From Oopsacas minuta (taxonomy: Eukaryota; Animalia; Porifera): DNA of 64,000 nt. The translations under genes and the position numbers were made by a program. The notes beneath the pieces are model-generated. The model saw only the letters and a list, made by a program, of their open reading frames with translations. It made no database searches and was not told where the DNA came from. Location: NCBI GenBank assembly GCA_024704765.1, contig JAKMXF010000333.1, forward strand, positions 237,266 through 301,265, written 5' to 3'. Below, piece by piece: positions 2 to 35,530 of the stretch (positions are counted from its first letter, which is position 1; every line of letters begins with the position of its first letter).

Positions 2-3000
2 TCTTCAACTGTATTCCAACTCACTACTAGTTATGCCCTCCAAAACTCTAAATCCTTGCAAATTTTACTCAGTGAGACAGACTTACTTGTATTGGAAAGC
101 ATCAGAAATACTGGATTTGCTGTCAACGAATCTAAAACATTATTCGAATTTTCTACATTAGCTTTCCAAGATACATCTGAACATTTTGTTAATGGTAACT
201 TTGGTAACGTTATCCCACCAATTCCTTCGGATCTTATCCCACCAAGACTTCAGAGCTTTTCCTTTGACTATGACAAGGGGCAGTTCCTCTTTGTTTTTTC
301 TGAAGAGGTTATTCCTGAGTCGCTAGATTTACGACAGCTTACTATCCAGGCATCTGCTAATAGTACGGCTATTTCTTATCGTCCCTCTTATTCGGGGTCT
401 GCTTCTTCCCTCACACTTAACACTATCCTCGCTACCTTATCCCAGAATGACATAGATGGTTTCAAAGGTGTTAGTGGTCTAGCTGATTCAGAAAATACCA
501 CCTTTGTTTCTAAATTTTCTGGTTTAATACGAGATTCAGCAACTATTGCGTCTATATCAATTTCCAGTAGCAATGCTCTGCAAGTAACTTCTTATGAGGG
601 AGACACAACCAGTCCTCTTCTTTTGAGTTTCTCAGTTAATTTAAACCCTGGCCAACCGATTACACTGATATTTTCTGAGACTATCGATATTTCTTCTCTC
701 ATACTTGACCAATTTGTTCTCCAAAGCGATAGCTCTAATCCTCAATACACGGAAGATTTCTCTGGAGCTGAATTTGTCTTACAAAATGCAGCAATAATTA
801 AATTCTTTTTACCCCTTTCGACTCTTGATAGAATCAAACGTATTGACGAATTTGCCACTGAAGTAGAAAATACATTCTTGTCAATAGCAGAAGGTGCAGC
901 TGCTGATACCATTGGTAAGATTATTCAATCTGTTATACTACCTGCAACATCGGTTGAACGTGATCTCTCACCACCCAATGTGATTACCTTTGATCTCGAT
1001 ATGGTGAGTGCTGAATTGACTCTATACTTCGATGAAACAGTTGATGCTAGTACTTTAGACCTTACAAAGTTTACGCTCCATGCTGCTAGAATATCCACTT
1101 CTTCTAATTTTACGTTTGACCAGGCTATTTCTATTACTACTGGTAATACATCCGTAATCCATGTAATCTTAAGTGGGGATCTTGATGGTATTAAATTGAA
1201 GCGTCTCTGTAGCAGTAATCTTACTTGTTTCCTAACTTATGTTGAAGGGGGAGTCATAGATCTAGGTGGACAAGTAATGCAATCTCTTAATATTACAATG
1301 GCTCCAGTTGTCACTAACCTTATTGCTGATATAGTCGGACCCAAACTTATTCTTTTTAACAGTATTGATCTAAATACTGGTATTATTTCACTTATTTTGG
1401 ATGAACCGACAGTAGTATCATCGATTGACCTCACTGCATTCTCTCTGAAGTCACTATTTACTGGCGAGCGGAGTGTTTATTCTCTTCAAGCTAGTACCGT
1501 ATTATATGTCGATGGAAGAGAAATTTCTTTTGAACTTGGAATATCTGATTTACTCACTTTAAAGAGTGATCCCTTTCTTTGCTCTTATAGAGGTAACTGT
1601 TATGCTAGCTTCACTAGTGAATTCATCCAAGACTATTATGGTAACATCGCAACTTCAGTAACATTAGAGATGCCTGGTTTTCTTGTTCATACGTATATTC
1701 AAGACTCGTCACGGCCTATTCTTACTTCTTATTCTTTGGATTTATCTGACAATTTTCTTAATTTAACTTTCAATGAGCCGATCTCTTTCTCAACCTTTAG
1801 ATTAGACGGTATTGTATTGCATTCTGCGCCTAATACTATCGAATACTTTATTTTCTCATCTAGTATCCCAAGTCAACCTATTTTTAGTTTGATTTCTATC
1901 TCTATTTCTGATAAGGACTTCAATCTCTTGAAGAACACTACTATAGCACGTTCCTCAGATTCCACCATCCTATCATTATCTTCTTTTACGATCCGAGACA
2001 ATGCTCTTTTTCCGAACGATGTTCAAGAGATCTTCCCCAATAGTTCATTCACCCCTAGCTTATTTATCCAGGACACAACCTCCCCTACTGTAGTTGAATT
2101 TATAGTAAATCTAAACCAAAATCATATTATCATCACATTTTCTGAGACTCTTCTCATAACCACCATTAACCTGGGAGGATTCACCTTGAATAATTTGCAG
2201 AACTCTTTTTCACCTGCTAGCCTAAATGGTTCTGCGATAATTGCTGTAGAACTGAATGATTATTTTATTATTACATTACTCCCCCCTCGTAGTGTTATTA
2301 TCACTCTCAAAACTTCACCTAGCATTGCAACAAATGGATCAAATACTTATCTATCTATTGAAGCTGGATCGTTTTCGGATAATGTGCCCAATCTAAATGA
2401 TGAATTCAGTCTTGTTATTGCTAGTGATGTTGTACAAGATTCAGAGCGTGTAGAGTTGTTGGAATACTCTATTAACATGAATATTGGTATTCTAAGTCTC
2501 ACTTTCAACGATGTAATTTTAACCGAATCTTTCCAGCCGGATTCATTTATTCTTCAGGCTAGTTTATCTCGTTCAGAAGGTCCTTACTATCAGCTTACTA
2601 GTTCAAGTATTGCTTCTAATCCAGATGGTTATGAACTAATTGTTAACCTGAATTCAGATCTACAGGGGATTAAATCGCAAACCGGTCTCATCACTTCAAT
2701 TAACACCACCTTCCTGACTATGGCTGCTGACGCAATTGATGATTCATTTGGTGTTGACATCATAGCAATAACAGACGGTAGTCCCCTACAAGCCAATGAT
2801 GTAATTCCTGACTTGTTACCCCCAGTACTTCTTGATTTTACTATTGATCTCAGTATTAACCTGATAAATCTCACTTTCTCAGATACTATTCTCCTTTCTA
2901 GTGTTAATCTAACTCATATACTTTTGCAATCTCAATCAAATCAAACCGTCCTGAATTTGAGTGAAAACTCTTTTGCCCTAACTGGAGGAGATATTATGTT

Positions 3001-6000: not shown

Positions 6001-9000
6001 CCCCATCGACTCTCAATTTGACACTCCAACAATTCAATTCACTATCCCTCCAACTAGTCTAAACCAACTCAAATGCCAACTGATTGCTCTTACACTTAAT
6101 ACCACAGTAATTGCTCATACAGAGTTGATGGTTTCTGACATGGTTTTCCCTATCCCCCTTCTTGTTGTTCCAAGAGTATTTGGCTCTAATGCCCTCATTG
6201 CGGATGCTTACTATCGTGACACTACCAGTCCTGTCTTATTAGAATTTACTGAAATGAATATCGATGAAGCCTCACTTACTCTCCGATTTTCTGAACCAGT
6301 AGCTCTCAACTATCTTGACTTTACTCATATTTCAATACATTCAGGTCTTGTTACAGGGCAAAGTTATACATTGCATCCTGGATCCGCAACACCAGTTGAT
6401 TGTACCTCAGTTAAATTTTACTTTAGTGATATTGATTTGGTTGCGATAAAGCTTAACTCCCAACTCGCTATCTCACGTGAGACAAGCTATACATCGGTTC
6501 TTAGCAATGCTACCCGAGATTTATCTGGGAATTATCTAGTGGGAAATAGCACTCGTTTCCTGGCTTCATCTTATGTCCGGCCAAACACACATCCTAGTTT
6601 ATTGTCGTTCAACTTAGATATTGATTCAGGCGAGTTAGTACTTACATTTGATGATGTAATGGATATTTCGAGTATCGCTTACTCACGATTGACATTGGGT
6701 CTCAGCCTTGATATTCCCACTCTATCCGATGGAGAGAAATATACCTTAACACGTGGTTCCACTCCTAGCACTGATGGATATATAGTTCTTATTAATATTC
6801 ATCCCGAAGACCTAAACTCCATTAAATTGCGTACCTCACTCTCTACCAGTAAAAATTCTTCTTACTTGCAAATTACAGCTGAAGCAATTGCTGACGTAGA
6901 ATTTCTACACGTTAGAGAAGTTATCTTACAAGTTACTAACTATACAGCTGATACCACCTCTCCTCAACTATCTCGTTTTTCCCTCAATCTCACCACTGGT
7001 TTGATGTCTCTCTTATTCAATGAAGTTGTGAATACTCAAAGTTTTAATGTTACTCTACTCTTCCTCCAAAATTCAGTTTCTAACATAACCTCAGATCGAA
7101 CATATCGACTTACCGGTTCAAGGAATTTACCGACAGAAAATTTAATAGAGTTAGACATATTTCTAAATGATTACGATTTAAATCAACTCAAGCGATTTGA
7201 TAATATTGGAACTTCAACTGCTAACACGTTTATATTTTTCAGTTATCGACTGGTTGATGACATGAACTTCAATCCTATTACTCCTATCCTCGCTACCATG
7301 GCACTATCTGCTTATACTCATACGGATGACTTGATTGATCCAGAATTACTTTCTTATTCTCTCGACCTGAATCTCGGTCTAATTATGCTCAATTTTAGTG
7401 AGACAGTTAATGTTTCATCCTTTAATCCTTTTGCACTTAAGATACAATGTTGTTCCAATACAATCCTGGTAACTCAGAGTTATTCTTTCACTGAAGATAC
7501 ACGTGCACGTGTGTTCTCTTCTCAAACTGTAGGAGATCATATCTTACTTGTAGACATCAGTGTTTCTGATTTAAATGAGATAAAACGTCTGACTAGCATA
7601 GCAACCAGTAGGGAGTCTAGTTATTTATCCACAACTGAAAATCTTATACTCGACATGGCAGATAACAAACTTGTTGCAATTCCCTTCATTGAAGCACTTC
7701 AGGCTGTATCTTTTACCTCGGATACTACTCAACCTATTCTTGATTCATTTTCCCTCGATCTTAATTCTGCCCTACTCAACCTTACATTTTCTGAAACTGT
7801 ACTTTCATCTTCTTTTCAGCCAAACAATCTCTCTATTCATGACAACTCCACTTCATATTATTCTTTTCTGTCCAGTTATCCCATAACTAACAATAGCTTT
7901 ATTCAGTCAATTTTGCTTAGCTTTGAAGATATGAATAACTTGAAATCTCTCACTACTATTGCTACTGCCAGAGATACGACCTTTTTATTCCATTCTGCTG
8001 GATTTATTGAGGATATGAATTCGAATGCAATCCTCGAATTGCAGGCTAATATTATCGCAAGTTCCTTTATTCCTGATACAACTCCAGTTGATCTGGTTTG
8101 TTATACCCTCGATATGAATACAGGAGAGATTATGATTACTTTTTCTGAATCTGTCAATTCATCTTCCATATCTGCTAGTTATATTTCTATTCAATCTACA
8201 AGAAATATATTAGAATCAAACATTTCCGTACAGTTAATCAGCATACAAGCTACTGCTAATCCTACACACATATTAACAGTTCTAATTAACAACGAGGATC
8301 TCAATTTAATTAAAGCAAATACTCAACTTGCTACTGATATAAACAATACATACTTGGCCGTCGGAATGATGGCTATTCAGGATATGAATAGAAATAATCT
8401 TTCTCCCATCAGCAATCTGGATGCTTTGATTACTTGTGGATATACTCAAGACAGTACACCTCCAATCTTAATTGCATTTGATTTGACTATGGAAGGGGGC
8501 CATATCCCTGTGATAGTCCATCTCCAGTTTTCTGAGACAGTTAATGCAAGTACGCTAATTATCCCATATATCACTCTCCAAGCAAATCTGTCAATTGATC
8601 CATTATACGCATATACTCTAACGAGTGGTGAATTCACACGAGTAGATTCTGATGTTTTAACTTTTACGATAAGTGACTCTGATTTGATAACTATTCAAGA
8701 TTTGGTTCCTATTTTACAATCTGAAAACACGTCCTACTTATCGATATTAGAAGATGCCGTTCAGGACATGAATAGCAATTTCTTATTGGAGGTGCAAAAC
8801 GATAGTGCAATTCTTGTTACTCAATACGTGATAGATTTGACTACTCCAGATATCTCTTCATTTGAACTCGACTTAGACCTAGGTGCACTATTTATCACAT
8901 TTACCTCTCCAGTCATACTCTCTAGCTTTGATATTACATCACTGACTCTACATAGTTCCCGTTTGAATACTTCTATTGGACTCAATCTATCCTTTTTCGA

Positions 9001-30000: not shown

Positions 30001-33000
30001 CACGACTTATATATTTATTGGTGAAGGCGCGATATTTGATATGAATCTAAATTCATATGGCCTAGTTAATTATGCCATTCAAGTTGACAAGTTTTCCGCT
30101 GACTTGACCGCTCCTGAACTTTTCTCATTTAATCTTGACATGAATTTAGGTTATTTGACGCTAACATTTAGTGAGGCAGTTGATACATCTTCTTTTGATA
30201 AAACGAAAATTTTCATTGGATCTGATGAATTGCTATCTAGCAATTTCTCTCTTGATTCACCAACTTTACAATGTCAACAAATTCGCATCACCTCCCTTCG
30301 TGCAAGGATAATTCAGATCGAATTGTGCCTTCATGTGTATTATGACCTCAAATTTGAATTGAAACTAGCTACCTCTGTTAATGATACTTATATATACCTT
30401 AGACCCGAAGCTCTTAGGGATTTTAGTAATAATGGAATCAATCAAATAATTCAAAGAGTAGCTAATTTTGTCCCTGATACTGATGATCCCACTCTTCTCT
30501 CCTTCACACTTGATATGAATATCGGAAGATTATCTCTGTACTTCTCTGAGCCCATTAACTCTACAAGTCTAGAAATCACAACCATTTCACTACAGGCCCA
30601 AAGTACAATCGGCGAATTTATCTCTCTCACTTCTCAATCTTACTTCTTAATGCAATGTGATATCCCTGACTCAACCAAATACTCGTGCATTGTCATTCAG
30701 CTTTCATATAAAGATCTTAATGCGATAAAGAATAACGAAAATCTAGCAACACAATTCTCGAACACTTTTATTGTGATTACAAATCAAACTATTAAAGACA
30801 CTTCCAATAATCCAGTTGTATCTGTATCAGCTAATGGTGCACTCTCTCTAAATTCTTCGAATTATATAAATGATCAGACCAGCCCCACCGTTGTTTCATT
30901 TTCTTTGGATATGGATTACGGCGCAATAACTATTACTTTCGATGAGGATGTTCAAAGAAGTTCGTTAACAATAACTGAACTCAATTTACAACCATCAATG
31001 TTCTCTGGGTCTGGTTCAATGGGAATTGCTCTTACTTCTGCAGATGAGATTAATTGGAACTGCTGCGAGGAAATATTTGCTACAATCAAGCTCACTCAAT
31101 CAGATTTGAATGCTCTAAAATTGGATGATACACTCGCTTCACGAAGGAATAATACATATCTTAGATTTACGAATAATCTTATACAGGACCATGCTGGCAA
31201 TTTTGTGAGGCCTCCAATCATTATTCAAGAAGGATTGTTAGTATCGAATTTTACTCCTGATACTACATCTCCCGTATTAATTGGTTTTTACTTCAATATG
31301 AATCCTCCAGAAAGTATAGAATTGTTATTTTCTGAGGCTGTAAGGGCCACTACTTTTAATGTTAAAAGCCTCACATTGCTTGGAACCCCTGCTACAACTA
31401 ATCCACTTTTACAATATACACTCTCTGATGAAATTCCCCAAATCCGCCCTAATTCTGTTTCTATTTCGATTATCCTCAACTTTACTGATACATTACAGAT
31501 ACAATCCAGGCCTTTCTTAGCTTCTAATTTCTCAAACATATATCTGGCGAGTCTACCAAGTTTAGTTTCCGATATGAATGCTAATCCTTTGAGTGAAATA
31601 TCAAAGAATACTCCAATCAATCTTACAATGCCTGACTACACAGAAGATAGCACCCATCCCTATTTATCAAGTTATACCCTCGACCTCAACACTGCTAATT
31701 TGATTCTTACTTACTCTGAAACAGTTAGATTACTCACTTTTCAGATTGATCAACTTATCCTTCAGGTTTCTAGGGGTTCCCTCTCAAGTATTCCTGCATA
31801 TCAGTTAACCGGCGGCTTAGTTTCTACAACTAATGGGAGAGATTGGTATATTGTTAACTTATCAATTTCTCCTGAGGATCTAATTAGTATTCAAAAGAAT
31901 GCTCGTGATAATCTTGTTACCAATTCCTTGACTACTTTTCTCAGTATTGACTCAAGACACGTCAGGGATATGGTGGGGTTAGAAATTGTGGAAATCAATG
32001 ATGATGAAGCTGTAGTTGTTGATAGATATATTCCAGATTCTACAAAACCCATTCTACTATCATTTGATCTAAACATTTCAGCTCCAATTGGTACTATCTT
32101 ACTTAATTTTAATGAAGTGGTTGATTTATCTACATTCCGTGTAGAATACGTTGAGTTGTATAATAGAAGACATATTTTATCTTCAACTCAGAAATTTATT
32201 TTATCAACAGCAAACATTATTTCTTCTGAGAATGACAATTCAATATTCTTCTCTTTAGATCCTTATGACCTAAATACAATCAAAAGTCTAACTAATTTAG
32301 CAAACACCGCAAACAACACTTTTATTTATTTGCCAAATTCTGCTGTCAACGATATGTATGGTAACCCTGTTGATGATAGAAATGGATCTACAATTCCTGT
32401 TAGAAATATTTTGTTAGACTCAACTCGGCCTATATTGGATGGGTTTGATTTTGATTTGAATACTGGTTCAATTGTTCTCACATTTTCTGAAACTGTGAAT
32501 TCATCTTCTTTTGATGTTACTCAAATTCGCCTACAATCTAATATATCGCTTCCATACGAGATATTTACATTAACTCGTCTTAGTTCCGCCTCTATTAGTG
32601 ATAGTCCAATTATCACAGTAAACATCCATGCAGATGATCTCAATGCCATCAAATCTTTAAGAAATTTGGCTAATGCCCAAATCAACACTTTTCTCGCACA
32701 TACAGCATTTCTTGTATCCGACATGCAAGGTTTGTTTGTGATCCCAGAATCTGGAAAATTAGTAAATACCTATGTCTTTGATAATACTCCTCCTCAACTG
32801 ATGTCTTTCAACTTTAATCTTACCTCTGAAATTCTCTCTCTCACCTTCGACGAAGCAATAGCATATGCTCATGTTATGATTTCTAAATTCCAAATCAAAT
32901 CTCAAATAGTTGGTGGATCCATGGTAACATTAACTGATGGAGATATATCCCCAGTTGATTCGACTATAATAAATATTTCACTATTTTCTTTCGACCTAAA

Positions 33001-35530
33001 CGAAATCAAAGGAGATCTTACACTTGCTGTCTCTTCGTCTTCCACTTTACTCGATTTGATGGCGGGCGCTGTAATTGACACTTCTGGTAATCCTAATGTG
33101 GCAGTATTACAAAGTGCCACTGAATATTATGAAGATACATTGAGCCCAATCTTGGAATCCTATGCACTTGACATTAATATTGGTCGATTGCGTCTTAACT
33201 TTAATGAAATAGTTTCATCTGTATCTGCGAAACTACAGTTTATTACTTTGAGTGATCAACCTTTCAGTATGATTAATTATACCCTTACAGATGGAACCTT
33301 GGATACTACGATTAACGATACCATAATTGAAATCTATCTCTCTGAACACGATTTAAATGCCATTAAATCCCTGGAGTCCTTAGCTATTAGCGTTAATTCT
33401 ACCTTCTTAAGCTTGTTAAATAATTTTATACAAGATTCCAATATGAATGCTATCGATGAAGTAATTTTCAGAAGGGCTGATATATTTATTAACGATACAA
33501 ATTCTCCGTATATAAATACGTTTGATTTAGATATGAATAATGGACACCTAACACTTAAATTTAATGAAACTATTGATTCTGGCACTTTTAATGCTACTGG
33601 CCTAACCATCCAGGCAGCTTCCAATGCATCTCCTTCTCAAAGATATCGTCTTACATCTGGCTCACTACTTAATTTGTCGGATAACAATTCACTTATCTTG
33701 GTAATCACTCAACAAGACCTAAACAACATTAAAGCATCCGGTATTGCCAAGGACGTGCACACTACATGGATTACGGCAGATAGTTATACAGTTTTAGATC
33801 ACAATTTGCGAAGTTTGGTGCCACTCATTAATGGCCTAACCAGTAGACAGGTTTCTATTTTCATTCCGGACGATACCCCTCCAATTTTACTTTCATATAA
33901 TGTGGATCTCTCTTTTGGAACGATAAGTCTATTTTTTTCTGAAACAATTGATTTCACCACCATTAATATCACATTATTTACTCTGCAGAATAATTCAATG
34001 AGTATGGATCAGATGTACACGTTAACTTCTATTTCCGTTGTTTCAAATGAACATTCTCCAAATATTACCATTTCATTATCCAGTGCGGATCTAAATGAAA
34101 TTAAGCGCAAAACTGACCTTTATACTACCAAATCGAATTCTTTCCTTAGTATCAGGATGGGTGCATTACGCGATAGGAATAACAATGCATTACTTGAGAT
34201 TTCTGTCTTCAATGCATTACAAGTTTCACAACTATTTGTAGATGGTGTTCCACCTTACTTTGTACGATTTGACTTGGATCTCAATAGCGGCAGTATAACC
34301 ATACTCTTCTCCGAGACCGTTAACTCTAGTAGCATATTAATTGAACATATATCTTTACAATCTAGTAATTATACCGATGCTACTAATTATAGTCTTCAAT
34401 CAGGTCGAATATTGAGTTCTGACGGCCCTTCAATTTTGATTCAGATTTCAGAGATGGACTTAAATGCAATCAAATTATTAACTGATCTGGCAACTTCTAG
34501 TAACTGTTTAAACAATACCTTCATTTCTTTGACTTCAAATACTATTTCTGACAACTTTGGTAATAAGCTTATTCCAGTCACAAGTAGCCCAATACACTCA
34601 TGCACACTAGATACAACAAGTCCAACCTTAAGTTCATATCAACTCGATCTAAATTTGGGTAAGCTCGTCTTGAATTTTAGTGAATCTATGAATGTAAGTA
34701 CTATCCGTTTCGAAGCATTCAAGCTCCACAGCTCTCGCCTCATTTCTAATACCACTCAAACAATTTTATTGGGTGGGGATAGCACTACAAGCCCCAACGG
34801 AGTTCAAATTTCTATACTAATTTCTTCTCCTAACCTAAACGAAATAAAACGTCTTACAAGACTAGGTACAGGTACTTTCAGCACGTTCCTGGAAACATTT
34901 TCTTTACCTGCCATATATGACATGAGTGGAAACTCTTTAGTTCCAATCCTTTCTAATGGAACAATCATGGCATCCGAATTCATTCCAGATACCACTTCTC
35001 CTGAGCTTGTAGAATATTCTCTTGATATGAATGACCTTTTCCTTTCATTTACTTTCACGGAAACAGTCAATGCCTCTTCTCTTAATCCAATTTATTTATC
35101 CATTCAACATGCCCCCACCCTATTAGTCTCAAATTTGATTATCACCTTAACTGGGGGCAATGTTTATATACAAGATGGCACTATAGTCAGGGTTAATCTT
35201 ACTTTGGATGACTCTAATTGTATTAAGACATACCCATTATTGGCTACAAATGAGAACAACACTTATATTGTGTATACTTCCCTCTTCATTGAAGATATGA
35301 ATCAGAATTCGATTCGTGCTATTCCTAATGGGTTTGGGAAGCAAGCTAAACTTTATGTAGACGATGCTACCCCACCTGTACTACAATCTTTTGATTTGGA
35401 TTTAGATGAAGGGCAGATTTCATTCCGATTCAGTGAATCAGTGAATAGCAGTTCTCTGAATATCACAGCTCTTACCCTCCAAAACTCTCACTCTCCTCCT
35501 AACTCTAGTTATACCTTAACTGGCAACTAA
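2..35530 (+). CDS. Giant (>11,840 aa, 5'-partial) intronless repeat protein with ~95 tandem ~125-aa putative Ig-like/beta-sandwich domains; probably an extracellular glycoprotein
   Basis: The frame is open from base 2 (TCT TCA ACT GTA..., SSTVFQLTT...) through the called TTG at 56 to TAA at 35528-35530. The motif DxTxPxLxxFxLD(L/M)NxGxLxLxFSExV recurs about 95 times by manual count. N-x-S/T sequons are abundant. No signal peptide or TM segment lies within the window. The Ig-like call rests on resemblance to the DTTxP...LxFSExV signature of SbsA/Big_5-type domains and is an inference. Confidence 0.93.
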   Translation, partial: SSTVFQLTTSYALQNSKSLQILLSETDLLVLESIRNTGFAVNESKTLFEFSTLAFQDTSEHFVNGNFGNVIPPIPSDLIPPRLQSFSFDYDKGQFLFVFSEEVIPESLDLRQLTIQASANSTAISYRPSYSGSASSLTLNTILATLSQNDIDGFKGVSGLADSENTTFVSKFSGLIRDSATIASISISSSNALQVTSYEGDTTSPLLLSFSVNLNPGQPITLIFSETIDISSLILDQFVLQSDSSNPQYTEDFSGAEFVLQNAAIIKFFLPLSTLDRIKRIDEFATEVENTFLSIAEGAAADTIGKIIQSVILPATSVERDLSPPNVITFDLDMVSAELTLYFDETVDASTLDLTKFTLHAARISTSSNFTFDQAISITTGNTSVIHVILSGDLDGIKLKRLCSSNLTCFLTYVEGGVIDLGGQVMQSLNITMAPVVTNLIADIVGPKLILFNSIDLNTGIISLILDEPTVVSSIDLTAFSLKSLFTGERSVYSLQASTVLYVDGREISFELGISDLLTLKSDPFLCSYRGNCYASFTSEFIQDYYGNIATSVTLEMPGFLVHTYIQDSSRPILTSYSLDLSDNFLNLTFNEPISFSTFRLDGIVLHSAPNTIEYFIFSSSIPSQPIFSLISISISDKDFNLLKNTTIARSSDSTILSLSSFTIRDNALFPNDVQEIFPNSSFTPSLFIQDTTSPTVVEFIVNLNQNHIIITFSETLLITTINLGGFTLNNLQNSFSPASLNGSAIIAVELNDYFIITLLPPRSVIITLKTSPSIATNGSNTYLSIEAGSFSDNVPNLNDEFSLVIASDVVQDSERVELLEYSINMNIGILSLTFNDVILTESFQPDSFILQASLSRSEGPYYQLTSSSIASNPDGYELIVNLNSDLQGIKSQTGLITSINTTFLTMAADAIDDSFGVDIIAITDGSPLQANDVIPDLLPPVLLDFTIDLSINLINLTFSDTILLSSVNLTHILLQSQSNQTVLNLSENSFALTGGDIMLFSDGTIVSISLLDDDSDIIKFIGNLSYLSFSSNLLRDISLNRVVRVLSTSAQEASLIIADMVSPSILSFTLDLNTGRIIITFDEVMRLSSIDGSYLILQTHSNFSESTNYVTIGSGIVRYYTPSRLDLNIINLDFRSEILNIIKSDTNFGLSPGNTFLSLIDILGMQGFSGVGRDLGGVLTRSINPDFGIPVSNVIPDIIPPTLQSFVLDLNTGVINLTFSESVNPDTFVPNVLNFQSSKLFGENSSMYSLTSGNAVVTNHTTLTVQLGFFDLNQIKNISTLAIDKNSTFITFNSSLSSDYSGNQVVEIVNGFGLLASSFISDETEPELLRFSLDLNTGTLRLYFDEVLDIISINPQLIQLRNSTNVSSQISLVNSTFLQLLTNESVVLIIDIYLLNEVKASLIGLTPNSTFIYLDPGAVSDRMFNTIPDSIISTAVVIPDTTPPTLQSFSLNLNSAILTLVFDESISSKSVNVSRITLISSLNSSFPNRSYTLTSIDSVISNDEQVTRIQLSDFDLNEIKLRDMLATSSEDTYLAIEENSLTDLRNNFNLAVTISMAPKVSIFTPDTISPILTSFDLDMNLGILTLFFSETVNSSTLNITTLSLQSSVTSPIQIVSISGGMFSPEPGTSIQLSLLEDDVNLLKYNAKLATDSQNTFISTLEFAVQDMNRNPMTPISHSAALKVTNFTSDIEQPSLLFAYLDMNNSAITLGFSETILHTDIFPSIFTLMATNQLMVNTTSHRYSLTTGVTSQINNTVIRIQIEQTDLDIIKGLSIVNLTGGPPFFSFPTAFAFDAFNNSINSINTSSARQFDILIRDQTRPKLISFASLNLNSQEIELLFSETIDLNSIRFDDLRMSNFFGPSPGITLSFVNITNGSILSTGITNSLTISISTFDINNIKANPSICSLKSSCYIRLGEYFLTDSAGNILEPVLDSTTGFIVDNYFADTIPPNLASFSFDLDSGVVLFAFDETVQRTTFRTNQISFSSTSTGINYFQLPDIPIDSQFDTPTIQFTIPPTSLNQLKCQLIALTLNTTVIAHTELMVSDMVFPIPLLVVPRVFGSNALIADAYYRDTTSPVLLEFTEMNIDEASLTLRFSEPVALNYLDFTHISIHSGLVTGQSYTLHPGSATPVDCTSVKFYFSDIDLVAIKLNSQLAISRETSYTSVLSNATRDLSGNYLVGNSTRFLASSYVRPNTHPSLLSFNLDIDSGELVLTFDDVMDISSIAYSRLTLGLSLDIPTLSDGEKYTLTRGSTPSTDGYIVLINIHPEDLNSIKLRTSLSTSKNSSYLQITAEAIADVEFLHVREVILQVTNYTADTTSPQLSRFSLNLTTGLMSLLFNEVVNTQSFNVTLLFLQNSVSNITSDRTYRLTGSRNLPTENLIELDIFLNDYDLNQLKRFDNIGTSTANTFIFFSYRLVDDMNFNPITPILATMALSAYTHTDDLIDPELLSYSLDLNLGLIMLNFSETVNVSSFNPFALKIQCCSNTILVTQSYSFTEDTRARVFSSQTVGDHILLVDISVSDLNEIKRLTSIATSRESSYLSTTENLILDMADNKLVAIPFIEALQAVSFTSDTTQPILDSFSLDLNSALLNLTFSETVLSSSFQPNNLSIHDNSTSYYSFLSSYPITNNSFIQSILLSFEDMNNLKSLTTIATARDTTFLFHSAGFIEDMNSNAILELQANIIASSFIPDTTPVDLVCYTLDMNTGEIMITFSESVNSSSISASYISIQSTRNILESNISVQLISIQATANPTHILTVLINNEDLNLIKANTQLATDINNTYLAVGMMAIQDMNRNNLSPISNLDALITCGYTQDSTPPILIAFDLTMEGGHIPVIVHLQFSETVNASTLIIPYITLQANLSIDPLYAYTLTSGEFTRVDSDVLTFTISDSDLITIQDLVPILQSENTSYLSILEDAVQDMNSNFLLEVQNDSAILVTQYVIDLTTPDISSFELDLDLGALFITFTSPVILSSFDITSLTLHSSRLNTSIGLNLSFFEDSVAIRDTIIRSSISVDDLSFIKSTADFGGTVENTYLSSGYNLAVGPNGNPTTFILPENALQASFVYPDKTRPNLLKFDFEYDAMITRLYFDEPMSILSLNALGFTLQNTQSSPTATHTLTNITSNSRDGNVVSILLSLADQNTLKSIPILVVSNSSTFLAISPLAITDTSGNLVNEIPISDALAVGEFGADMSIPELLYFSYNANVDTLTLYFSETVNTQSLNISAITLSDRVFNGSLNVSYHSLIYTQISNLINDSVLDIPLNLLDFSIAKSLGICTTRSKCYLSIANNSIYDMVGLGLRGIRATSAISARIYLPDNAAPSLTNFLQFNASSYSLRLSFDEALLISSFNSSALSLTTIIPETLQRVNLFDSQSYLVNPFTIEIVLSESDRFALQSHLQICTYRGNCYLILEEGFIQDLNNNPSIGNSGIITEVFIDDTVQPNLLEFSIDLNSALLSLTFSETVSANSFSPNGLVLQNLRNGTLFYRLTTSTIDNVDGTNISVNISGQDLNAIKSKPFIKSIYDTFLGISSSAFTDTAFVPNYVKPITLGLNVSSYISDSTPPYIQSFSLDLQGRTLKLTFTESILVSSLNASLFSLHSNVIGGVSISVLASSILPVDPPDIGSKIVTIYLSPIFISALKLNSSIATSVDSTFLSSLALSVFDTAGNPIGPTPRIQVENIIFDSIFPVLSSFSIDMDKGMLNLTFSDVILINTFDITAVFVQNSRYSTSSNRFQLTQAQSFYTLDGYSVVIYLGFIDFVTIKAAVGVSDSINTTYLTLKAHAIDDHNNRDVQAITNGKALRASIFISDNSRPELLSYELDMDSGTLTLSFNDALQASSFDTTQLIFQNEMALSQSNSTLRVIGGDYIRTNEANTVVVTFSLSNLNDLKRNIYLATQESNTYLSFSNLTVNDIANNSVVEILAENARRVDTFVQDVTGPYLQSYDLDMNTGLITLQFDETILLSSFNPSGITILNNGNMSLSTQYLALTGGMLIGQNNDNFLLNIQSDDLNNIKSQLNLATSKSDSYIWFDQTAFTDMNRNGVQVQSLALQVFSFSPDVTNPAGIGFALNMSSRLLYIYLTEFANIDTINPSKLTLTSLSNEISSNHSLISGTFGLSNNTLLEIELSDIDYYSIQQYPGLATSPENVFLTLDSGFIYDAANNPSNVTLTPLVINNFFPDNVRPQLLNFTLDMDSNRLYLEFNDVVNISTFNLEGLTLISSLNSSFAQSVSLQSSSLFQTDTLNIVEILLSKQDTESITSRPPLATSLITTYLSLNSGSISDIARNSNFPTILLPVSMFTPDQTSPFVIEYSFDLSLENLTLSFSEVVPYYTLNVSTLSIASSTSDPPGYMHRLFNSTVLSAERISSVITVQLGQSDLNMIKSEFLLATNNGNTFLRYISDSFMDSSNNSATVSFPILSRFVPDSIAPRILSYNLDMNTGILMLTFSETVLSSTVNEMGFTLLNTSNNDFTSLNFQSFSNVTQSSYTVVILTISLNDILLVKNDRYLATALENTYLDLSYNAIQDTNFNFLQLQPSPLRVTSYIPDSTSPQLVSFVLDLDSYLITLNFDEPIDSRTINITDFVLINTTSVGYSSFKLTDGFYPISDSKDFNISIVKSDIDSLNLLTDLCTSPLNCLLYHSHLLAEDIAGNNAIPILQNTSISITSFVRDNTSPMLIQFEHFDFNTGLIILRYNEILKLTSINPLSLQFSDDNGITSNFVILTGYNSVQLFNGSVVEIIILDSDLNLFKTTSDLCQKRGSCFIRYNSTFLTDQAGNPVVPVLPDDLNIDIEERPENLLLDSSPPYLSQFSLDLEGFSITLSFNEAILESTFSSSAITLQSAFRSNLTYQLTGGEGTKVSDNVIVLALLESDVNELKILLQLAYSINTTWLIHSNTLISDLFSNFIESRVNNISALRVTNFIPDNVRPAATEFTELDLQQGQLRIKFSEPLLPGSFDFTRIALANNGDLRLNLTGGSVIRDPNDLDTVIITLTSQDLLNLKVDTNIGTSRANSFIQFEASVFRDTNGNNATVSTGILQVVTFTQDLIPPNFESFTLDMNLGTMLLRFDDVVDTTTLNADEITIHSFDFVSSTEQFYKLTRGSTISNNGFDVLINIDANDLDELKMRNQLAISINSTFITLTANAITDTGGFGIRAVNVPVQVESFIEDSTRPYLIAFAFDGNTGALTLYFSEAMYITSLNPTAITLLNHMNVTLASQVYTLTGGMAIPNVTAVQINLYLNLFDLHNMFELGDLATNAGDTYISFPQNLITDMNQNFIFGVNLSNSMNSSGHTTDIMPPHLLNFQLDLNYGILFLTYNEPVNITTTIPDRFTLQSQRTLTSGVSYSLTGGFSEIFDTNILPNTGVVDSDAIIQFHMSDYDLNEVKKLIKLATQPDNTYLILELGSILDTSGNPAQEVLNGSAFKTTSFIEDRISPQLLNFSIDLDLDLVSLTFSETVNVQTLNFSSLTFFGNATTLQPSYTLTNGNIITSNNDFVLSFNFIRDDINTIKLDRDLLTNSLNTLLLITAYTIRDMNNNTVIPFNISNILLVSTFRQDQTSPSLENYIFDLNQGLIRILFSETVDTESFELASIILSNMPNSIGRSLALSGGNFSENSPIVNIYLTFDDVNTLKRHLDLVSDENSTYLSFSSLLIMDMNTNPVEAIDISSAKQPLLFIPDTTKPELIEFSLDMTGSMRELPLRLLLTFSETINSTSFNPLSFSFIDNPTSPTQISSLTNGTIISVSDTELEIIIQNSDLDQIKMQPPLLLFANTSYLSIVEGGFYDNSGNPLKVIPLNDSLLITSYQADLSTPILSSFVLDMDTSTLTLTWSEVVVLDTIDITGITIQSMQNLILSNGHYYSLTNASSYYGLLDNILHVIISKFDEDIIKADVELANSISSTYISLTRGVIFDPANNPSQQIDSTNGLIASEYEIEQIRPTLIAWDILYTTKIVTLQFSETVNVTSFMPNEISFQNRRNNPSQVYQLTGGDTNSNFGTLIELILTDFDLNGIKALEDLLTSVNTSFIIVTDDVIYDMSANPIRPITTGSALQVRNFNRDIIRPFLVSSSLNLTSRYLILSFDETVNQSTLLLNDIVLSSFDGIEYFGYSIISSRWDNLFSPTLSIILSDSDFNNISLNRICLTDNCYISLLNGTVLDMSNLASRAVTNRRITNFYPDFASPSVVVFSQYDSSIGIISITFDETIDISSVRLDQLTLVSLFKDAEEYYTLTNASYVNTTNSLLVDIFLSRQDFLEIQTRNLLCYSQASCYILFSSSFVKDIHGNEVLPQIDGQWPGLIAKSFISDSIRPRLIFYSLNMNTGVFYFQFNEPIEVSRAQPQFISVHPSNTSSVSYLLTGGYLNQLNSDFIVLNLTIDDILYLKSTNFVKSKNDTYISFTSNAFTDASKGLNPVIPVSVPLPPFEYISDTKSPTVKSFSLDLNSDRLIVTFDEPILISSLNLSFFTFYLSMNNQSMSLDRSIIISYILPGSITATIQLSQNELIFLKTSETISLYPGSYLTISPFSFTDTSNNKFQGLTSRLNIFDLILDTTASILVTFSIDMDFGLISLTFDDVIDPSTFDPNALVLQDDLRSSNRVGLSSSSSTISDDGYIIDVLISNLDLILLKETNNLVTNVNTSFITYAAFLLDDTYGVDVIAITNGKSIKASNFTPDTTRPVFIGFELDLNSGRIVLNFSEPVNASTLISTNIILLPFESSTNRNLSITGGYSIRSIDGRSLSLYIPQNDLDYIKLDLSFGTDPNNTYIIFPDSTVLDLVGNAVIGTSNTRGYIADRVTEDRVLPELISFSLDMNFGLLNLTFNEVVSGPTANPNTITLHSQSNGSDSNSHKLFESRASTYNSTILSVSISDNDLNSIKLVRELAHGRSTTFMSFSEDIVCDMNGNKARPIVSFTSMIVSQFTSDNTLPRLIAFSFDRNIGNLSLTFSEVVDIDTFDVTSLTAVDNTTLYSLRQHTFVSAFISLVSYYPVYNLLLSNEDQNSIKRLNNFWSNENTTYLIAESSTVSDVFSNQLVSIQDGGALAAYLVRPDNTPPEMENFELDMDKGILTLSFNEVISALSLIASRITLQDGIPTRFHNYTLTNSRIESSINNEIVNIRISRTDLDGIKVLSNLANSRFTTYISLQTGLVGDTSSNQFTGLLIPIVTSNFTADTTRPSLNSFNLSLTSESLSLSFSEAINRNSLDVKQLTIQSSASSDAISFALSLFSFSESNNDSVIVINIGIGDLNIIKDEIYLAIDNLTTYLSITELLVTDMAENRVNVIVETSALQVSYFEEDTISPQLTSFSLNINSNVMKLYFSETMHPYNFNVTGIILQNSDQVPEQEVMLGNTSNFYRIIPTGFNILLSEEDMNLIKFNRELATTLNNTYLSISQFTTSDRNLNPVVILPQSNALRAVNLTTDTIPPILRGFHVDMNQSLISFTFSETMNVSSINLNATTLSQSLATSSLQLTGGISLTDDSPIIVINFLKSDLDELTRINICIDISECYLSFTESFISDMAGNMIVPITIENQLATDSFIKDEIHAQLDEFVSLDFNTGLIVLLFSETINSTTVNVTALSLNDLATSPTNRIYLTGGAVLSNDSTTLRIQLSNEDQNRLKALYPSRLCSVSQNCFIRLQTNFVMDMFGNPLISVEDTPFIDSKHIPFMLISDQTSPDLVTFDLDLDNHIVILYFTEPIDYNTFSAVSITFTNALNSSATHLLIGNNIRLTNSYELIIQFSLDILNVESLQANEALATNNLTTYIAFTSSLVQDVYGNLIRPRVDRINSTRVSKYTRDRSRPTLLTFIQFDLNTASLTLSFSEPINVYSINFTALTLTNGSSGGSSLTLVGGIGHYFDEARQSITFTLTPEDLRNIKLNDNLATNAMNTFIIITEMFITDMAGNRILELSSPIMTEEYLTDITSPNLISFDFDLNFGLLILTFDDVLRLGTLDAQYLELQNMRSNPSQSQLLSTSSMSSSPNGYIVNITLSFRDINSVKMLDNLATSKLNTYLAMRSETISDSAGVPVTGIVINDAQLVANYTSDLTRPQLGNFSLDINSGVLILSFTEPINVRSFDFTKITLQDDANIVDSEEFIMLNGGYPIPIDTGVIITIELTFSDLNSLKEMTLLSTRLNNTFISFTADTVEDMANLKIIPISNSSAQPAYSFNTDIIPPMLVNYCLSLNSGVLLMTFSETVNANSLDMSKIIFQNQLLPTSIYRLTGGDVSTDNSTYITINLSTPDLNQIKVRSDLAISTSTTLLGFDQGMIYDMNDNPISSIGEGDAFRVNATCYEEDTTAPILICIDIDISINVLTLYFDETVNVSSLEITELSIGNHELVSTETYRLKGGSIRNDDNTTVIIDLDFPDFTSIQQLTNLATNKGNTFVFFSEQLIRDMNYNLISPVYSTSAFPICQLFNDTSNPYLLNATFDFNEGILTLSFSESVNVSSIQVTQLYLHSSQSMQPEYNVLSASVPLLNGPVVNITLSNEDLNNFKQLPVLFVPDYFFLNITPQLLSDMAGNQVQSFAYPRICNIIVPDTTAPQLISFRLDMIDTLPPLLLVLTFTETINVNSIDVTQFSLRVNNVTSGLLNTYNITNATISSLNSTDITLSISNFDLENIRDQPPLGHTVLDSFLSASSSSASDMSNNEVTSIDNPPLAPYLNLADNIEPQLLSFLLDLDNALIVLTFSEPVLSSTFNPTYITFRSGPTLERTTQYFTISPTHFTLIGTNIIQVILPVSDQNDIKRNHLLANSVNSTFISLQSAVVKDIAGNDALPISPNNTLIVEEFIPDRTRPLLTAFNFNFQTCLITLFFNEVINSSATVPTFISFVNVRSIVPSEVYQLTGGSYPNIFATSFDILITHSDKNNIKKLENLATNEDDFYLTYTDDLAYDMNSNRLIPRSSRNALKVTNFTFDLIKPVLLYFTLDMDLGTLGLSFNETVNVNSLEVDMITLLDSKFDAAIQSHTLSDSSVQTIDSDFVNIYLSDFDLNEIKRKQFCRQYNDCYLTFSEDTVRDQFSLSIEGIRELNNSIQVFFYTSDTSRPMLYEFTSFDLMDGQLTLSFFETVNVSSVNFQAITLQDFSEPPIQVSYTLTGGFTNGSSDTKFTIYLNDQDIIAIKSLAELCTLRSNCYVTLTDKLVNDMVGLPLLPVVNSTNGFVARYFGHDLTKPFVKSFSFDMDTGKLFISFNEPIDRPTVNITAIRLQGISNISNSIELYHEISAEYVQSNSDFTLISITLTDANLRTLKSRSFAKSFNTTYLSIDSNSFTDTAYAPNQVIPISPFRGLSLSKANYTSDTTPPYLVCYTLDMDSDQIILTFNEPINISSLNCTSITLFNASHANSTSLTLRSCTILPGTYIYEIQVSLQLNEKDIVILKSDLNFLTKQSNSYLLLEANAIFDAQSNPSMSTTFQQSCFFQPDNTRASLLSFSIDLNVGILYLTFSDVILASSFDPTSLTLQSSKTSTPEFTFTLSEASTSESSNGYIIQIDISHFDLLNLKSTPILAKSPSTTYLTFKATLLDDTMYVDVVPITDGSALLVSEYIPDEIPPTLLLFDLDLNTAILSLSFSDTLNTKSFNPTGITLISQSNIQFHDSTYLRLTGGSFVRTNNGTVIYLELTDIDLNTLKLNIYLVVNRATSYLSIDFDSITDLHNNSLIAVLNISALQVSNFLADITNPELVSYILDMNKGEILLTFNEVVNASSLNPSELTFQNPQTEIFTLSGGFLSTNDSTVLMVRLIIADVYSLNRLRSLTTSLNNTFLSLTNLTVIDMNFNNINPIYQSNPLQASNFTADFKSPSLLSYTFDLNVGVMMLYFSEVVASELFDPSLLLLLNTPIIFVSNTSNQTADSNITQQSPSHRNFSITSGNVTLRDDLLIEFELSLSDLNAIKAIPDLATNTEDTYLAFNSSLVSDTFYNEILPINITNPIQVFNYTSDVTRPILNAFDFDLDAGSVIIHFSETVNSSTLIIHEVVLHGGRMLDSLNFSLNSSSVVQVYSPDVTIHLSQDDIDKIKSINLLAEDENTTYIFIGEGAIFDMNLNSYGLVNYAIQVDKFSADLTAPELFSFNLDMNLGYLTLTFSEAVDTSSFDKTKIFIGSDELLSSNFSLDSPTLQCQQIRITSLRARIIQIELCLHVYYDLKFELKLATSVNDTYIYLRPEALRDFSNNGINQIIQRVANFVPDTDDPTLLSFTLDMNIGRLSLYFSEPINSTSLEITTISLQAQSTIGEFISLTSQSYFLMQCDIPDSTKYSCIVIQLSYKDLNAIKNNENLATQFSNTFIVITNQTIKDTSNNPVVSVSANGALSLNSSNYINDQTSPTVVSFSLDMDYGAITITFDEDVQRSSLTITELNLQPSMFSGSGSMGIALTSADEINWNCCEEIFATIKLTQSDLNALKLDDTLASRRNNTYLRFTNNLIQDHAGNFVRPPIIIQEGLLVSNFTPDTTSPVLIGFYFNMNPPESIELLFSEAVRATTFNVKSLTLLGTPATTNPLLQYTLSDEIPQIRPNSVSISIILNFTDTLQIQSRPFLASNFSNIYLASLPSLVSDMNANPLSEISKNTPINLTMPDYTEDSTHPYLSSYTLDLNTANLILTYSETVRLLTFQIDQLILQVSRGSLSSIPAYQLTGGLVSTTNGRDWYIVNLSISPEDLISIQKNARDNLVTNSLTTFLSIDSRHVRDMVGLEIVEINDDEAVVVDRYIPDSTKPILLSFDLNISAPIGTILLNFNEVVDLSTFRVEYVELYNRRHILSSTQKFILSTANIISSENDNSIFFSLDPYDLNTIKSLTNLANTANNTFIYLPNSAVNDMYGNPVDDRNGSTIPVRNILLDSTRPILDGFDFDLNTGSIVLTFSETVNSSSFDVTQIRLQSNISLPYEIFTLTRLSSASISDSPIITVNIHADDLNAIKSLRNLANAQINTFLAHTAFLVSDMQGLFVIPESGKLVNTYVFDNTPPQLMSFNFNLTSEILSLTFDEAIAYAHVMISKFQIKSQIVGGSMVTLTDGDISPVDSTIINISLFSFDLNEIKGDLTLAVSSSSTLLDLMAGAVIDTSGNPNVAVLQSATEYYEDTLSPILESYALDINIGRLRLNFNEIVSSVSAKLQFITLSDQPFSMINYTLTDGTLDTTINDTIIEIYLSEHDLNAIKSLESLAISVNSTFLSLLNNFIQDSNMNAIDEVIFRRADIFINDTNSPYINTFDLDMNNGHLTLKFNETIDSGTFNATGLTIQAASNASPSQRYRLTSGSLLNLSDNNSLILVITQQDLNNIKASGIAKDVHTTWITADSYTVLDHNLRSLVPLINGLTSRQVSIFIPDDTPPILLSYNVDLSFGTISLFFSETIDFTTINITLFTLQNNSMSMDQMYTLTSISVVSNEHSPNITISLSSADLNEIKRKTDLYTTKSNSFLSIRMGALRDRNNNALLEISVFNALQVSQLFVDGVPPYFVRFDLDLNSGSITILFSETVNSSSILIEHISLQSSNYTDATNYSLQSGRILSSDGPSILIQISEMDLNAIKLLTDLATSSNCLNNTFISLTSNTISDNFGNKLIPVTSSPIHSCTLDTTSPTLSSYQLDLNLGKLVLNFSESMNVSTIRFEAFKLHSSRLISNTTQTILLGGDSTTSPNGVQISILISSPNLNEIKRLTRLGTGTFSTFLETFSLPAIYDMSGNSLVPILSNGTIMASEFIPDTTSPELVEYSLDMNDLFLSFTFTETVNASSLNPIYLSIQHAPTLLVSNLIITLTGGNVYIQDGTIVRVNLTLDDSNCIKTYPLLATNENNTYIVYTSLFIEDMNQNSIRAIPNGFGKQAKLYVDDATPPVLQSFDLDLDEGQISFRFSESVNSSSLNITALTLQNSHSPPNSSYTLTGN
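224..35527 (+). repeat. Protein-level tandem array of ~95 domains with a 23-domain (11+12) super-repeat
   Basis: Diagnostic variants recur every ~8.6 kb, e.g. AIDDSFGVD/AIDDHNNRD/LLDDTYGVD/LLDDTMYVD at 2732, 11348, 19907 and 28493. Units are not near-identical at DNA level. Confidence 0.88.

What the first reader, a model, noticed from the sequence alone, without database searches (positions are those of the whole stretch)
2..35530. Single uninterrupted coding stretch of >35.5 kb in a genome whose other genes have short introns
Seen: no in-frame stop over >11,840 codons of AT-rich DNA, with the frame still open at the left edge. Neighbouring transposon genes have introns of ~60-365 bp. Known: the largest human coding exons (TTN ~17 kb, MUC16 ~21-22 kb) are shorter than this. 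Inference: either an exceptionally large exon produced by tandem expansion of an intronless module, or a gene of horizontal (bacterial giant-adhesin-like) ancestry. True size is unknown because the start lies upstream.
Basis: partly seen in the sequence, partly recalled or inferred. Interest (0 to 1): 0.78.

Follow-up and report, generated by a model that had tools for sequence, protein, structure and literature searches.

The report
Giant sponge gene's 3' end
The window holds the last quarter and the true end of one unbroken 147,210-base reading frame in the glass sponge Oopsacas minuta; it encodes 395 bead-like modules (49,069 residues), which if made in one piece would be longer than any protein described so far.

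Summary
The stop-free frame at 2-35530 is the tail of a 49,070-codon frame (contig C333:125,583-272,792). It has no gaps. About 2,885 stops are expected by chance and none is seen.

The genome matches Oopsacas minuta. The frame encodes 395 tandem modules of about 124 residues that are only 27% alike, so assembly collapse is unlikely. The module folds confidently as an Ig-like sandwich closest to S-layer protein SbsC (Pfam Big_5, below threshold).

Fragments from other sponges match modules 61-395 in the same order. One foreign assembly carries a 41,538-residue ORF call ending identically.

New here: the stop at 35,528 falls mid-module. Seven relatives stop at the same half-module, and three genomes show no continuing exon. 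I read it as the real C-terminus.

A relative has a GT-AG intron where Oopsacas has none. Recent bacterial transfer is not supported.

Not shown: expression (no RNA run available), the exact start, and the function. My best reading is a secreted, acidic, micrometre-long filament.

This scan already reported upstream parts of this same frame (s1-290525, s1-290537, s1-290527) and paralogues elsewhere.

The parts
2..35527 (+). Last 11,842 codons of the 49,070-codon open frame. The frame starts outside the window at contig C333:125,583, with the first ATG at 125,586, which is 111,680 bases left of window base 1.
2..196 (+). C-terminal part of module 300
   Evidence: repeat-profile hit
230..35320 (+). 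Modules 301-394: 94 complete modules of about 124 residues, arranged in a 23-module super-repeat (lag-23 identity 0.31 against 0.27 background)
   Evidence: module fold pLDDT 95.6
35363..35527 (+). Module 395, first half only (profile positions 1-56, ending ...YTLTGN). This conserved half-module is the C-terminus.
35528..35530 (+). TAA stop codon, confirmed in read contigs of three runs
35531..35991 (+). Single-copy, AT-rich 3' flank, a possible 3' UTR. It has no AATAAA or ATTAAA. All three frames close within 30 bases of the only good acceptor-like site, at about 35,659.
35992..37200 (.). High-copy repeat that bounds the locus (read depth 5- to 80-fold that of the ORF, by bin). It holds a hAT dimerisation-domain remnant at 36,174-36,518 on the minus strand.

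Best explanation
The window holds the 3' quarter and the genuine end of one nuclear gene of the glass sponge Oopsacas minuta. All of the gene's modules lie in a single 147,210-base exon. From its first ATG the frame encodes 49,069 residues, 5.36 MDa before glycosylation, with a pI of 4.05. It consists of 395 tandem, individually diverged Ig-like beta-sandwich modules of about 124 residues and nothing else. The modules are distantly related to the bacterial SbsA/SbsC (Big_5) domain. They are ordered in a 5-module super-repeat (modules 1-70) and a 23-module super-repeat (modules 71-395, including the window). The protein ends in a conserved half-module.

Inferred, not shown: the chain is secreted and forms a beads-on-a-string filament in the cell coat or matrix. 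At about 4-4.5 nm per Ig-type module (general knowledge) it would be roughly 1.6-1.8 micrometres long. The grounds are a short hydrophobic N-terminus that fits the -3/-1 cleavage rule, no membrane span, 1,004 N-X-S/T sites, few cysteines and a strongly acidic charge. The fixed module order, kept across sponge classes, suggests that it works as a position-specific scaffold or ruler rather than as generic filler.

The single-exon state is most likely due to intron loss in this compact genome. Whether a tiny 5' exon supplies the real signal peptide is open.
For: The frame, its size and its lack of gaps are shown. It holds 395 contiguous profile hits with a period of 111-142 residues. Mean pairwise module identity is 26.6% and the maximum is 50%.

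The organism is identified by two lines. The assembly has 365 contigs and 61.46 Mb, matching the published O. minuta genome. A family protein of this genome carries an O. minuta name, LOD99_2401.

The module fold has pLDDT 95.6. The best solved match is SbsC: Z 8.8, rmsd 2.9 A, 102 residues aligned. Foldseek gives TM 0.57-0.59 to SbsC. Big_5 is hit weakly by 10 of 70 modules.

Collinear fragments from other sponges tile modules 61-395 with z scores of 7-15. They include Corticium candelabrum LOC134193700.

Seven relatives stop within 1-9 residues of the same 'Y.LTG' position. No second-half exon lies in the 28 kb downstream here, nor in the 10 kb downstream in L024. In L036 each copy of the duplicated gene end closes at the same stop.

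A foreign assembly calls a 41,538-residue ORF with the same ending. Of 19 listed differences to a 97%-identical second organism, 11 are synonymous, against 23% expected by chance. None breaks the frame. Relatives with clear signal peptides go straight into modules. One of them, from Aureococcus, starts its mature chain '...SA|VSLASFDLD', like '...QA|VSLTSSTLDLN' here. The paralogue's C-terminal tail has no membrane span.
Against: There is no RNA or protein evidence for this gene. No RNA run was on record, and my single read-laying run used DNA-like contigs.

The N-terminal hydrophobic stretch is only about 8 residues and has no charged n-region. The sequence TTAATAG|G just inside the frame could instead be a splice acceptor. 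No orthologous N-terminus was found.

No canonical poly(A) hexamer lies in the 460-base 3' flank.

Introns of relatives sit at the same 'LTG|G' position where this frame stops. A conserved exon end is therefore not fully excluded.

N-glycosylation sites are only about 17% above what the composition predicts (my arithmetic). Function and localisation are pure inference.
Confidence: 0.7

Rival explanations
1. The stop at 35,528 is not the protein's end. An intron at the family's recurrent 'LTG|G' position (here it would need a GC donor, G|GCAACT) joins the giant exon to distant exons. These could be on another contig, and could include a TIG/Calx-beta tail like the one on contig C210.
For: Relatives have read-through junk after 'LTG', which implies phase-1 introns at exactly this module position. 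The contig ends 28 kb after the stop, inside transposon debris. The only TIG/Calx-beta tail of the family in this genome lies on C210.
Against: There is no GT at the junction. No second-half module lies in 28 kb downstream here, nor in 10 kb downstream in L024. In L036 the gene's 3' end plus flank is duplicated, each copy with the same stop. The short C-terminal peptides after 'LTG' are alike in diverged relatives (SSFP, SSFVP, ISSP), which intron sequence would not be. Mean intron size in this genome is 341 bp. The C210 tail continues its own array.
Confidence: 0.1
2. The frame is real, but it is not used as one 49,069-residue chain. Internal promoters, premature polyadenylation or proteolytic processing give much smaller products.
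For: No transcript or protein data exist for it. A 147-kb mRNA is at the edge of what has been documented; the PKZILLA-1 transcript is 136,071 nt.
Against: Selection has kept all 49,070 codons in one frame. It has also kept the order of 335 modules across sponge classes, which is hard to explain if only pieces matter. Another sponge keeps a 41,538-codon ORF. PKZILLA-1 shows that transcripts and proteins of this size can be made.
Confidence: 0.12
3. It is a silent relic or pseudogene.
For: There is no expression evidence. The paralogous array on C210 carries an in-frame stop and a frameshift.
Against: No stops are seen where about 2,885 are expected. Synonymous changes are in excess against a 97%-identical organism. 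Every module still matches the profile.
Confidence: 0.03
4. It is bacterial contamination, a recent horizontal transfer of a giant adhesin gene, or an assembly artefact.
For: The module fold is closest to bacterial S-layer and Big_5 domains. Some metagenomic look-alike clusters are labelled bacterial.
Against: GC and read depth match the flanking single-copy DNA. hAT and other eukaryotic transposon remnants lie on the same contig. Orthologues in annotated sponge genomes carry spliceosomal introns. The modules are too diverged to collapse or expand in assembly. A 59-kb independent contig agrees with the assembly.
Confidence: 0.03

Closest known systems
Unnamed family of giant Ig-module proteins of sponges and choanoflagellates (e.g. 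Corticium candelabrum LOC134193700, Dysidea avara and Amphimedon queenslandica A0A1X7VNV0 'IPT/TIG domain-containing protein', an Oscarella pearsei transcript of 7,574 aa, an Acanthoeca spectabilis protein of 6,120 aa, and O. minuta LOD99_2401)
   Same: They share the module of about 124 residues with the motif D.T.P.L..F.LDLN.G.L.L.FSE...DLN.IK...LA...T.L...D..GN. Orthologous fragments match modules 61-395 in the same order and end in the same half-module.
   Different: Database models are pieces of at most about 8,000-9,600 residues, cut at introns or at internal Met codons. Here the whole array is one exon of 49,070 codons. Some paralogues end in three TIG domains plus Calx-beta, or start with a half-module; this gene does neither.
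Bacterial S-layer protein SbsC / Pfam Big_5 (SbsA Ig-like domain) and giant bacterial Ig-repeat adhesins
   Same: SbsC is the best solved structural match: Z 8.8, rmsd 2.9 A, 102 of 124 residues. The sequence logic is the same, with 'D.T.P' at the start, 'FSE' in strand B and 'D..GN' at the end. Both are tandem rods on a cell surface.
   Different: Sequence identity is only 15-16%, and Pfam Big_5 is below threshold. This is a eukaryotic nuclear gene whose relatives contain introns. There is no anchor, secretion-system signal or adhesive tip domain.
Titin and PKZILLA-1 (the largest proteins described so far)
   Same: All are chains of hundreds of domains. Like titin, this one has higher-order super-repeats with a conserved domain order.
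   Different: The frame is 49,069 residues, against 45,212 for PKZILLA-1, which has 17 exons. Titin is intracellular and built from I-set Ig and Fn3 domains, and PKZILLA is an enzyme. This protein is probably extracellular, has a single module type, and is unverified at the RNA and protein level.
Sponge aggregation factors and other giant matrix proteins (Calx-beta-rich proteoglycan cores, cadherin-type rods)
   Same: They are large, secreted, glycosylated, acidic sponge surface proteins. A paralogue's tail has a Calx-beta-like domain.
   Different: This frame has no Calx-beta, Wreath or cadherin domain. I recalled the defining features of aggregation factors from memory and did not test them.

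Membership tests
Unnamed sponge/choanoflagellate giant Ig-module family | Tandem modules of about 124 residues with the shared motif, recognised by one profile | tested here: met
   There are 395 hits in this frame and 37-65 hits in each long relative. Protein searches give E = 0 with 24-31% identity.
Unnamed sponge/choanoflagellate giant Ig-module family | Orthology shown by module-for-module collinearity | tested here: met
   The best diagonals have 0.30-0.37 identity against a background of 0.27, with z scores of 7-15. They tile modules 61-395. Modules 1-60 have no collinear partner among the hits.
Unnamed sponge/choanoflagellate giant Ig-module family | N-terminal signal peptide (secreted protein) | tested here: inconclusive
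   MIFIMLIGCQA|VSL fits the -3/-1 rule by eye but is very short. An alternative splice acceptor lies inside it. No signal-peptide predictor was available.
Pfam PF13205 Big_5 (SbsA Ig-like) | Score above the Pfam gathering threshold | tested here: not met
   Two 2,000-residue pieces gave no hit. Ten of 70 single modules hit weakly, with best E 3.9e-4.
Pfam PF13205 Big_5 (SbsA Ig-like) | The same beta-sandwich fold as SbsC domains | tested here: met
   Z 8.8, rmsd 2.9 A over 102 residues. Foldseek gives TM 0.57-0.59. Atlas rows carrying Big_5 give TM 0.55-0.63.
Titin-like intracellular Ig/Fn3 proteins | I-set Ig and Fn3 domains, plus a kinase | tested here: not met
   No such Pfam hits. A titin Ig domain scores only Z 4.5.
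Recently transferred bacterial giant adhesin | Bacterial genomic context or composition, and no eukaryotic relatives with introns | tested here: not met
   GC and read depth match the host. Transposon remnants flank the locus. A relative has a GT-AG intron inside the array.
Sponge aggregation factor | Calx-beta and Wreath domains in the core protein (features recalled from memory) | tested here: not met
   No Calx-beta hit in the frame. Only the C210 paralogue's tail has a weak Calx-beta hit. The Wreath domain was not tested.

The most novel reading that the evidence does not exclude
The frame is translated in one piece, giving the longest polypeptide and the longest coding exon known in any organism. 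Its conserved C-terminal half-module (strands of profile positions 1-56) is not a leftover but a docking site. The missing half would be supplied in trans by the second-half module that follows the signal peptide in paralogues (P0070, P0087, P0009). Giant chains would then be joined end to end into multi-micrometre extracellular cables. Such cables would be peculiar to collar-cell organisms, sponges and choanoflagellates.
Probability: 0.08. Interest if true: 0.93.

Novelty: new variant of a known kind. Interest (0 to 1): 0.8.

Why it matters
If it is expressed as read, this is the largest protein predicted for any eukaryote. It is about 8.5% longer than PKZILLA-1 and more than 35% longer than titin. 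It would also be by far the longest coding exon I know of (147 kb). It takes up 0.24% of a very compact 61-Mb animal genome.

The count and order of at least 335 modules have been held since sponge classes diverged. That implies position-specific partners, so the protein may be an extracellular counterpart of titin's ruler logic in the earliest-branching animals and their protist relatives.

I found no paper on the family. Gene predictors cut it into pieces, so it is effectively invisible in current annotations.

It also bears on three other questions. One is how transcription, export and translation cope with a 147-kb intronless message. Another is intron loss in compact genomes. The third is a conserved half-domain terminus that invites a test of split-domain assembly.

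Tried and rejected
- **DNA tandem repeats:** none were found; the repetition exists only at protein level.
- **Pfam on long pieces:** nothing useful, only a sub-threshold CopC hit.
- **PDB sequence-profile search:** only chance-level rows.
- **Continuation of the array:** I looked downstream in the window and in 25.5 kb upstream of the frame and found none.
- **Joining with the C27 and C210 arrays:** I considered that they form one gene of about 80,000 residues with this frame, and rejected it. C27 ends in a whole module with its own stop. C210 has its own TIG/Calx tail. Orthologues of this gene end where it ends.
- **Orthologous N-terminus:** I tried the last word-based protein search and two searches of the own genome with a paralogue's signal peptide plus half-module. 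Only internal modules came back.
- **RNA support:** no RNA run was on record, and the runs I laid behave like genomic DNA.
- **The full 49,070-residue translation:** it has no single reference, so I analysed it only in local scripts and sent it to no search tool.
- **Complex prediction of the two half-modules:** not run. The only available partners come from other species, and any first half and second half of this fold would probably be predicted to fit, so neither outcome would be informative.
- **Big representative search:** not run, because no claim here rests on the absence of relatives.
Full report
**Observation.** The + strand frame beginning at base 2 is open to the TAA at 35,528-35,530: 11,842 codons with no stop. 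A search of the window's own assembly showed that this is only the tail of a 49,070-codon frame. I fetched the contig upstream and rebuilt it in a local script. The frame is C333:125,583-272,792. It is preceded by TGA at 125,580, has its first ATG at 125,586, and holds no N. From its base composition about 2,885 stops are expected. The other five frames of the same DNA hold 1,546-6,187 stops, and GC falls from 0.43 to 0.29 across codon positions. Chance is excluded.

**Organism and reliability.** The assembly has 61,460,524 bases in 365 contigs. The published Oopsacas minuta genome has 365 scaffolds, about 61 Mb and 36% GC (PMC10280926). A family protein that matches contig C210 of this genome is named LOD99_2401 [Oopsacas minuta]. 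The ORF and its flanks have the same GC. Contigs built independently from three runs of one sample cover 32,001-35,800, including the stop. One is a 59,043-base contig with no differences over the 3.6 kb compared. ORF depth equals that of the single-copy flank. Tandem Repeats Finder finds no DNA repeat, and the modules are on average 26.6% identical, at most 50%. Repeat collapse or expansion in assembly is therefore not a concern.

**What it encodes.** An iteratively built profile finds 94 complete modules plus two partial ones in the window and 395 in the whole frame. The period is 111-142 residues (median 124), and nothing else is present. Only three linkers exceed 25 residues, and they read as degenerate module sequence. 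Homology therefore leaves no room for hidden in-frame introns. The window holds the end of module 300, modules 301-394 and the first half of module 395. The consensus is DtT.P.L.sFsLDLN.G.L.LtFsE.vn.ss...L...DLn.IK....LAts..nTfLs.....D..gN.

From the first Met the product has 49,069 residues, 5.36 MDa and pI 4.05. It has 1,004 N-X-S/T sites and 0.5% Cys. Identity between modules peaks at lag 5 in modules 1-70 and at lags 23 and 46 in modules 71-395. In the window the lag-23 value is 0.31 against 0.27 background, and 82% of pairs lie above the background mean. This agrees with earlier notes of this scan on the upstream windows.

**Fold.** With 70 modules of the window as the alignment, AlphaFold2 gives pLDDT 95.6: a beta-sandwich with one short helix at the DLN.IK motif. 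The best solved matches are domains of the Geobacillus S-layer protein SbsC. Foldseek gives TM 0.57-0.59. VIA-align gives Z 8.8, rmsd 2.9 A, 102 residues aligned and 16% identity. Pfam gives nothing above threshold on long pieces. Big_5 (SbsA Ig-like) is hit weakly by 10 of 70 single modules. The language-model and shape searches of the ESM Atlas point to the same clan, Big_5, SWM_repeat and Big_12. I therefore call the module a distant, unmodelled relative of Big_5, not a member by Pfam's criterion.

**Relatives.** Word-based searches find hundreds of bits to thousands of bits of similarity at 24-31% identity. The named sources are:
- Geodia barretti, Ephydatia muelleri, Dysidea avara and Amphimedon queenslandica (demosponges);
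- Corticium candelabrum and an Oscarella pearsei transcript with a complete 7,574-residue ORF (homoscleromorphs);
- the choanoflagellate Acanthoeca spectabilis;
- more distantly, the alga Aureococcus anophagefferens.

I cut all hits into modules and compared them module by module with the 395 modules here. Clear diagonals appear, with 0.30-0.37 identity against 0.27 and z scores of 7-15. They tile modules 61-395. Examples are P0077 on 61-121, P0078 on 127-186, P0083 on 184-240, P0109 on 242-294, P0079 on 274-331 and P0069 on 331-395, the last two on one contig. The number and order of at least 335 modules are thus shared with other sponges. Modules 1-60, the 5-module super-repeat zone, found no collinear partner.

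**The 3' end, which is new for this window.** The frame stops in the middle of a module, at profile position 56 of 110 (...YTLTGN*). No second half of a module lies in any frame of the remaining 28 kb of the contig. The stop is not made by a transposon. A single-copy flank runs to about 35,991, and only there does a high-copy repeat with a hAT remnant begin. There is no GT at the junction.

Decisively, every relative that aligns to the last modules ends at the same place:
- P0071: ...YTLRGN*
- P0016: ...YTLTGQ*
- P0072, Corticium: ...HRLEEN*
- P0093: ...YTLTET*
- P0069: ...NINGEGSSFP*
- P0081: ...YTLTGDDSSFVP*
- P0041: ...YALTGNNATISSP*

Genomic DNA of two of them was fetched. In L024 (ENA ERZ19433661) the TAA sits at the same codon position, and 10 kb downstream holds no module remnant. 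In L036 (ENA ERZ25069267) the last 5.5 modules plus flank are tandemly duplicated at 99% identity, and each copy closes with the same half-module and stop. I conclude that the half-module is the conserved C-terminus.

One caveat applies. Relatives have introns at this same 'LTG|G' position elsewhere in their arrays, seen as read-through junk in P0105, P0106 and P0108. The half-module may therefore be a fossil of an exon boundary. A splice to a distant exon is not strictly excluded; I give it 0.1.

AlphaFold2 models the last 1.5 modules confidently (pLDDT 95.7). The alignment was dominated by whole modules, however, so this says little about whether the half-module is stable on its own.

**Introns.** In L024 a canonical GTGAGT...TTTAG intron of about 260 bases lies in the linker that corresponds to modules 384|385. 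Other relatives break mid-module at positions corresponding to modules 241/242 and 331. Oopsacas is continuous at all of these positions. Yet L036's assembly lists an ORF call of 41,538 residues that ends in the same half-module. An almost intron-free giant exon is thus not unique to Oopsacas. The simplest reading is progressive intron loss, not expansion of an intronless unit.

**The 5' end.** The frame opens TGA-ACT-ATG and reads MIFIMLIGCQAVSLTSSTLDLN..., with the first module starting at profile position 6. This looks like a minimal signal peptide, with C at -3 and A at -1. The Aureococcus relative has ...ATASA|VSLASFDLD in the same register. But TTAATAG|G inside it is also a plausible phase-1 acceptor. 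No module-like exon lies in the 25.5 kb upstream. A very short signal-peptide exon would escape that search. This point stays open.

**Paralogues.** The genome holds further arrays. C27 has an 11,222-codon frame that ends after a whole module. C210 has frames of 1,805-6,826 codons and ends in three TIG domains plus a Calx-beta-like domain with no membrane span. It is interrupted by one in-frame stop and one frameshift. C199 also has hits. Three orthologous paralogue N-termini from other sponges (P0070, P0087, P0009) carry a clear signal peptide followed by the second half of a module. That is the mirror image of the C-terminus described here. This prompts the split-domain docking idea given as the novel case. 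I have no test of it.

**Selection and expression.** A run from a second organism (97% identity) covers 32,001-35,381. Of its 19 listed differences, 11 are synonymous, against 23% expected by chance. None breaks the frame, and no indel falls in the ORF. This is a small sample; 64 further differences were not listed. No RNA run was on record for the stretch, so expression of this gene is not shown. Family members are transcribed in Oscarella and Acanthoeca, as shown by transcriptome-derived complete ORFs.

**Comparison and novelty.** PKZILLA-1 has 45,212 residues, a 136,071-nt transcript and 17 exons, and was reported as larger than titin, until then the largest known protein. This frame is about 8.5% longer and lies in one exon. 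Literature searches on Oopsacas, on giant sponge proteins, on the longest exons, and on Big_5 in sponges and choanoflagellates found no description of the gene or family. Earlier notes of this scan had already reported the upstream windows of this same frame and its paralogues. This report adds the full frame size, the conserved half-module terminus, the intron comparison and the 41,538-residue counterpart.

**Mechanism.**
- *Shown:* the frame, the module architecture, the fold class, the conserved order and end, and purifying selection (weakly).
- *Inferred:* secretion, a rod of about 1.6-1.8 micrometres (395 modules at roughly 4-4.5 nm each, from general knowledge of Ig-type domains), and a scaffold or ruler role suggested by the fixed module order.
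- *Speculative:* Ca2+-stiffened linkers formed by the conserved acidic motifs, and end-to-end docking through the half-modules.

Noticed in passing
window 35992-37200: A high-copy repeat begins 460 bases after the stop. Its read depth is 5- to 80-fold that of the ORF, by bin. It contains a hAT dimerisation-domain remnant at 36,174-36,518 on the minus strand.
   Followed up: partly
window 60274-63670: More hAT remnants: Dimer_Tnp_hAT hits in ORFs at 60,274-60,738 (+) and 61,873-62,922 (-), plus an adjoining 261-residue ORF at 62,885-63,670 (-) with no Pfam hit. The contig ends at window base 64,000.
   Followed up: partly
I confirmed only a PHD finger in the ORF at 42,731-43,267 (-).
   Followed up: partly
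L007 (G000:C210:321469-326532), minus strand: The paralogous array on C210 has one in-frame stop and, about 200 bases further on, a frameshift at profile position 60 with no sequence missing. This is either recent decay or a consensus error in the assembly.
   Followed up: partly
L036 (ENA ERZ25069267, contig ctg10024_64x_l): Another sponge-type assembly carries an ORF call of 41,538 residues. After it, the last 5.5 modules plus the 3' flank are repeated in tandem with a 5.83-kb period at 99% identity, followed by a further, shorter copy. Each copy ends in the same half-module and stop.
   Followed up: partly
P0070, P0087 (Dysidea avara), P0009: Orthologous N-termini of a paralogous family gene show a clear signal peptide followed directly by the second half of a module, a Cys-pair variant. 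P0070 and P0087 are 47% identical module for module.
   Followed up: partly
L010 5101-5520 (C333:125,101-125,520): Just upstream of the frame's ATG lie about three copies of an AT-rich unit of about 120 bases (...aaacaaatagttgaaatctcaaa...). It may be a small satellite or a MITE array.
   Followed up: no
P0173 (Aureococcus anophagefferens JL722_12293): A pelagophyte alga has a 2,541-residue protein with 16 modules of this type and a signal peptide. The module family therefore reaches beyond sponges and choanoflagellates.
   Followed up: no
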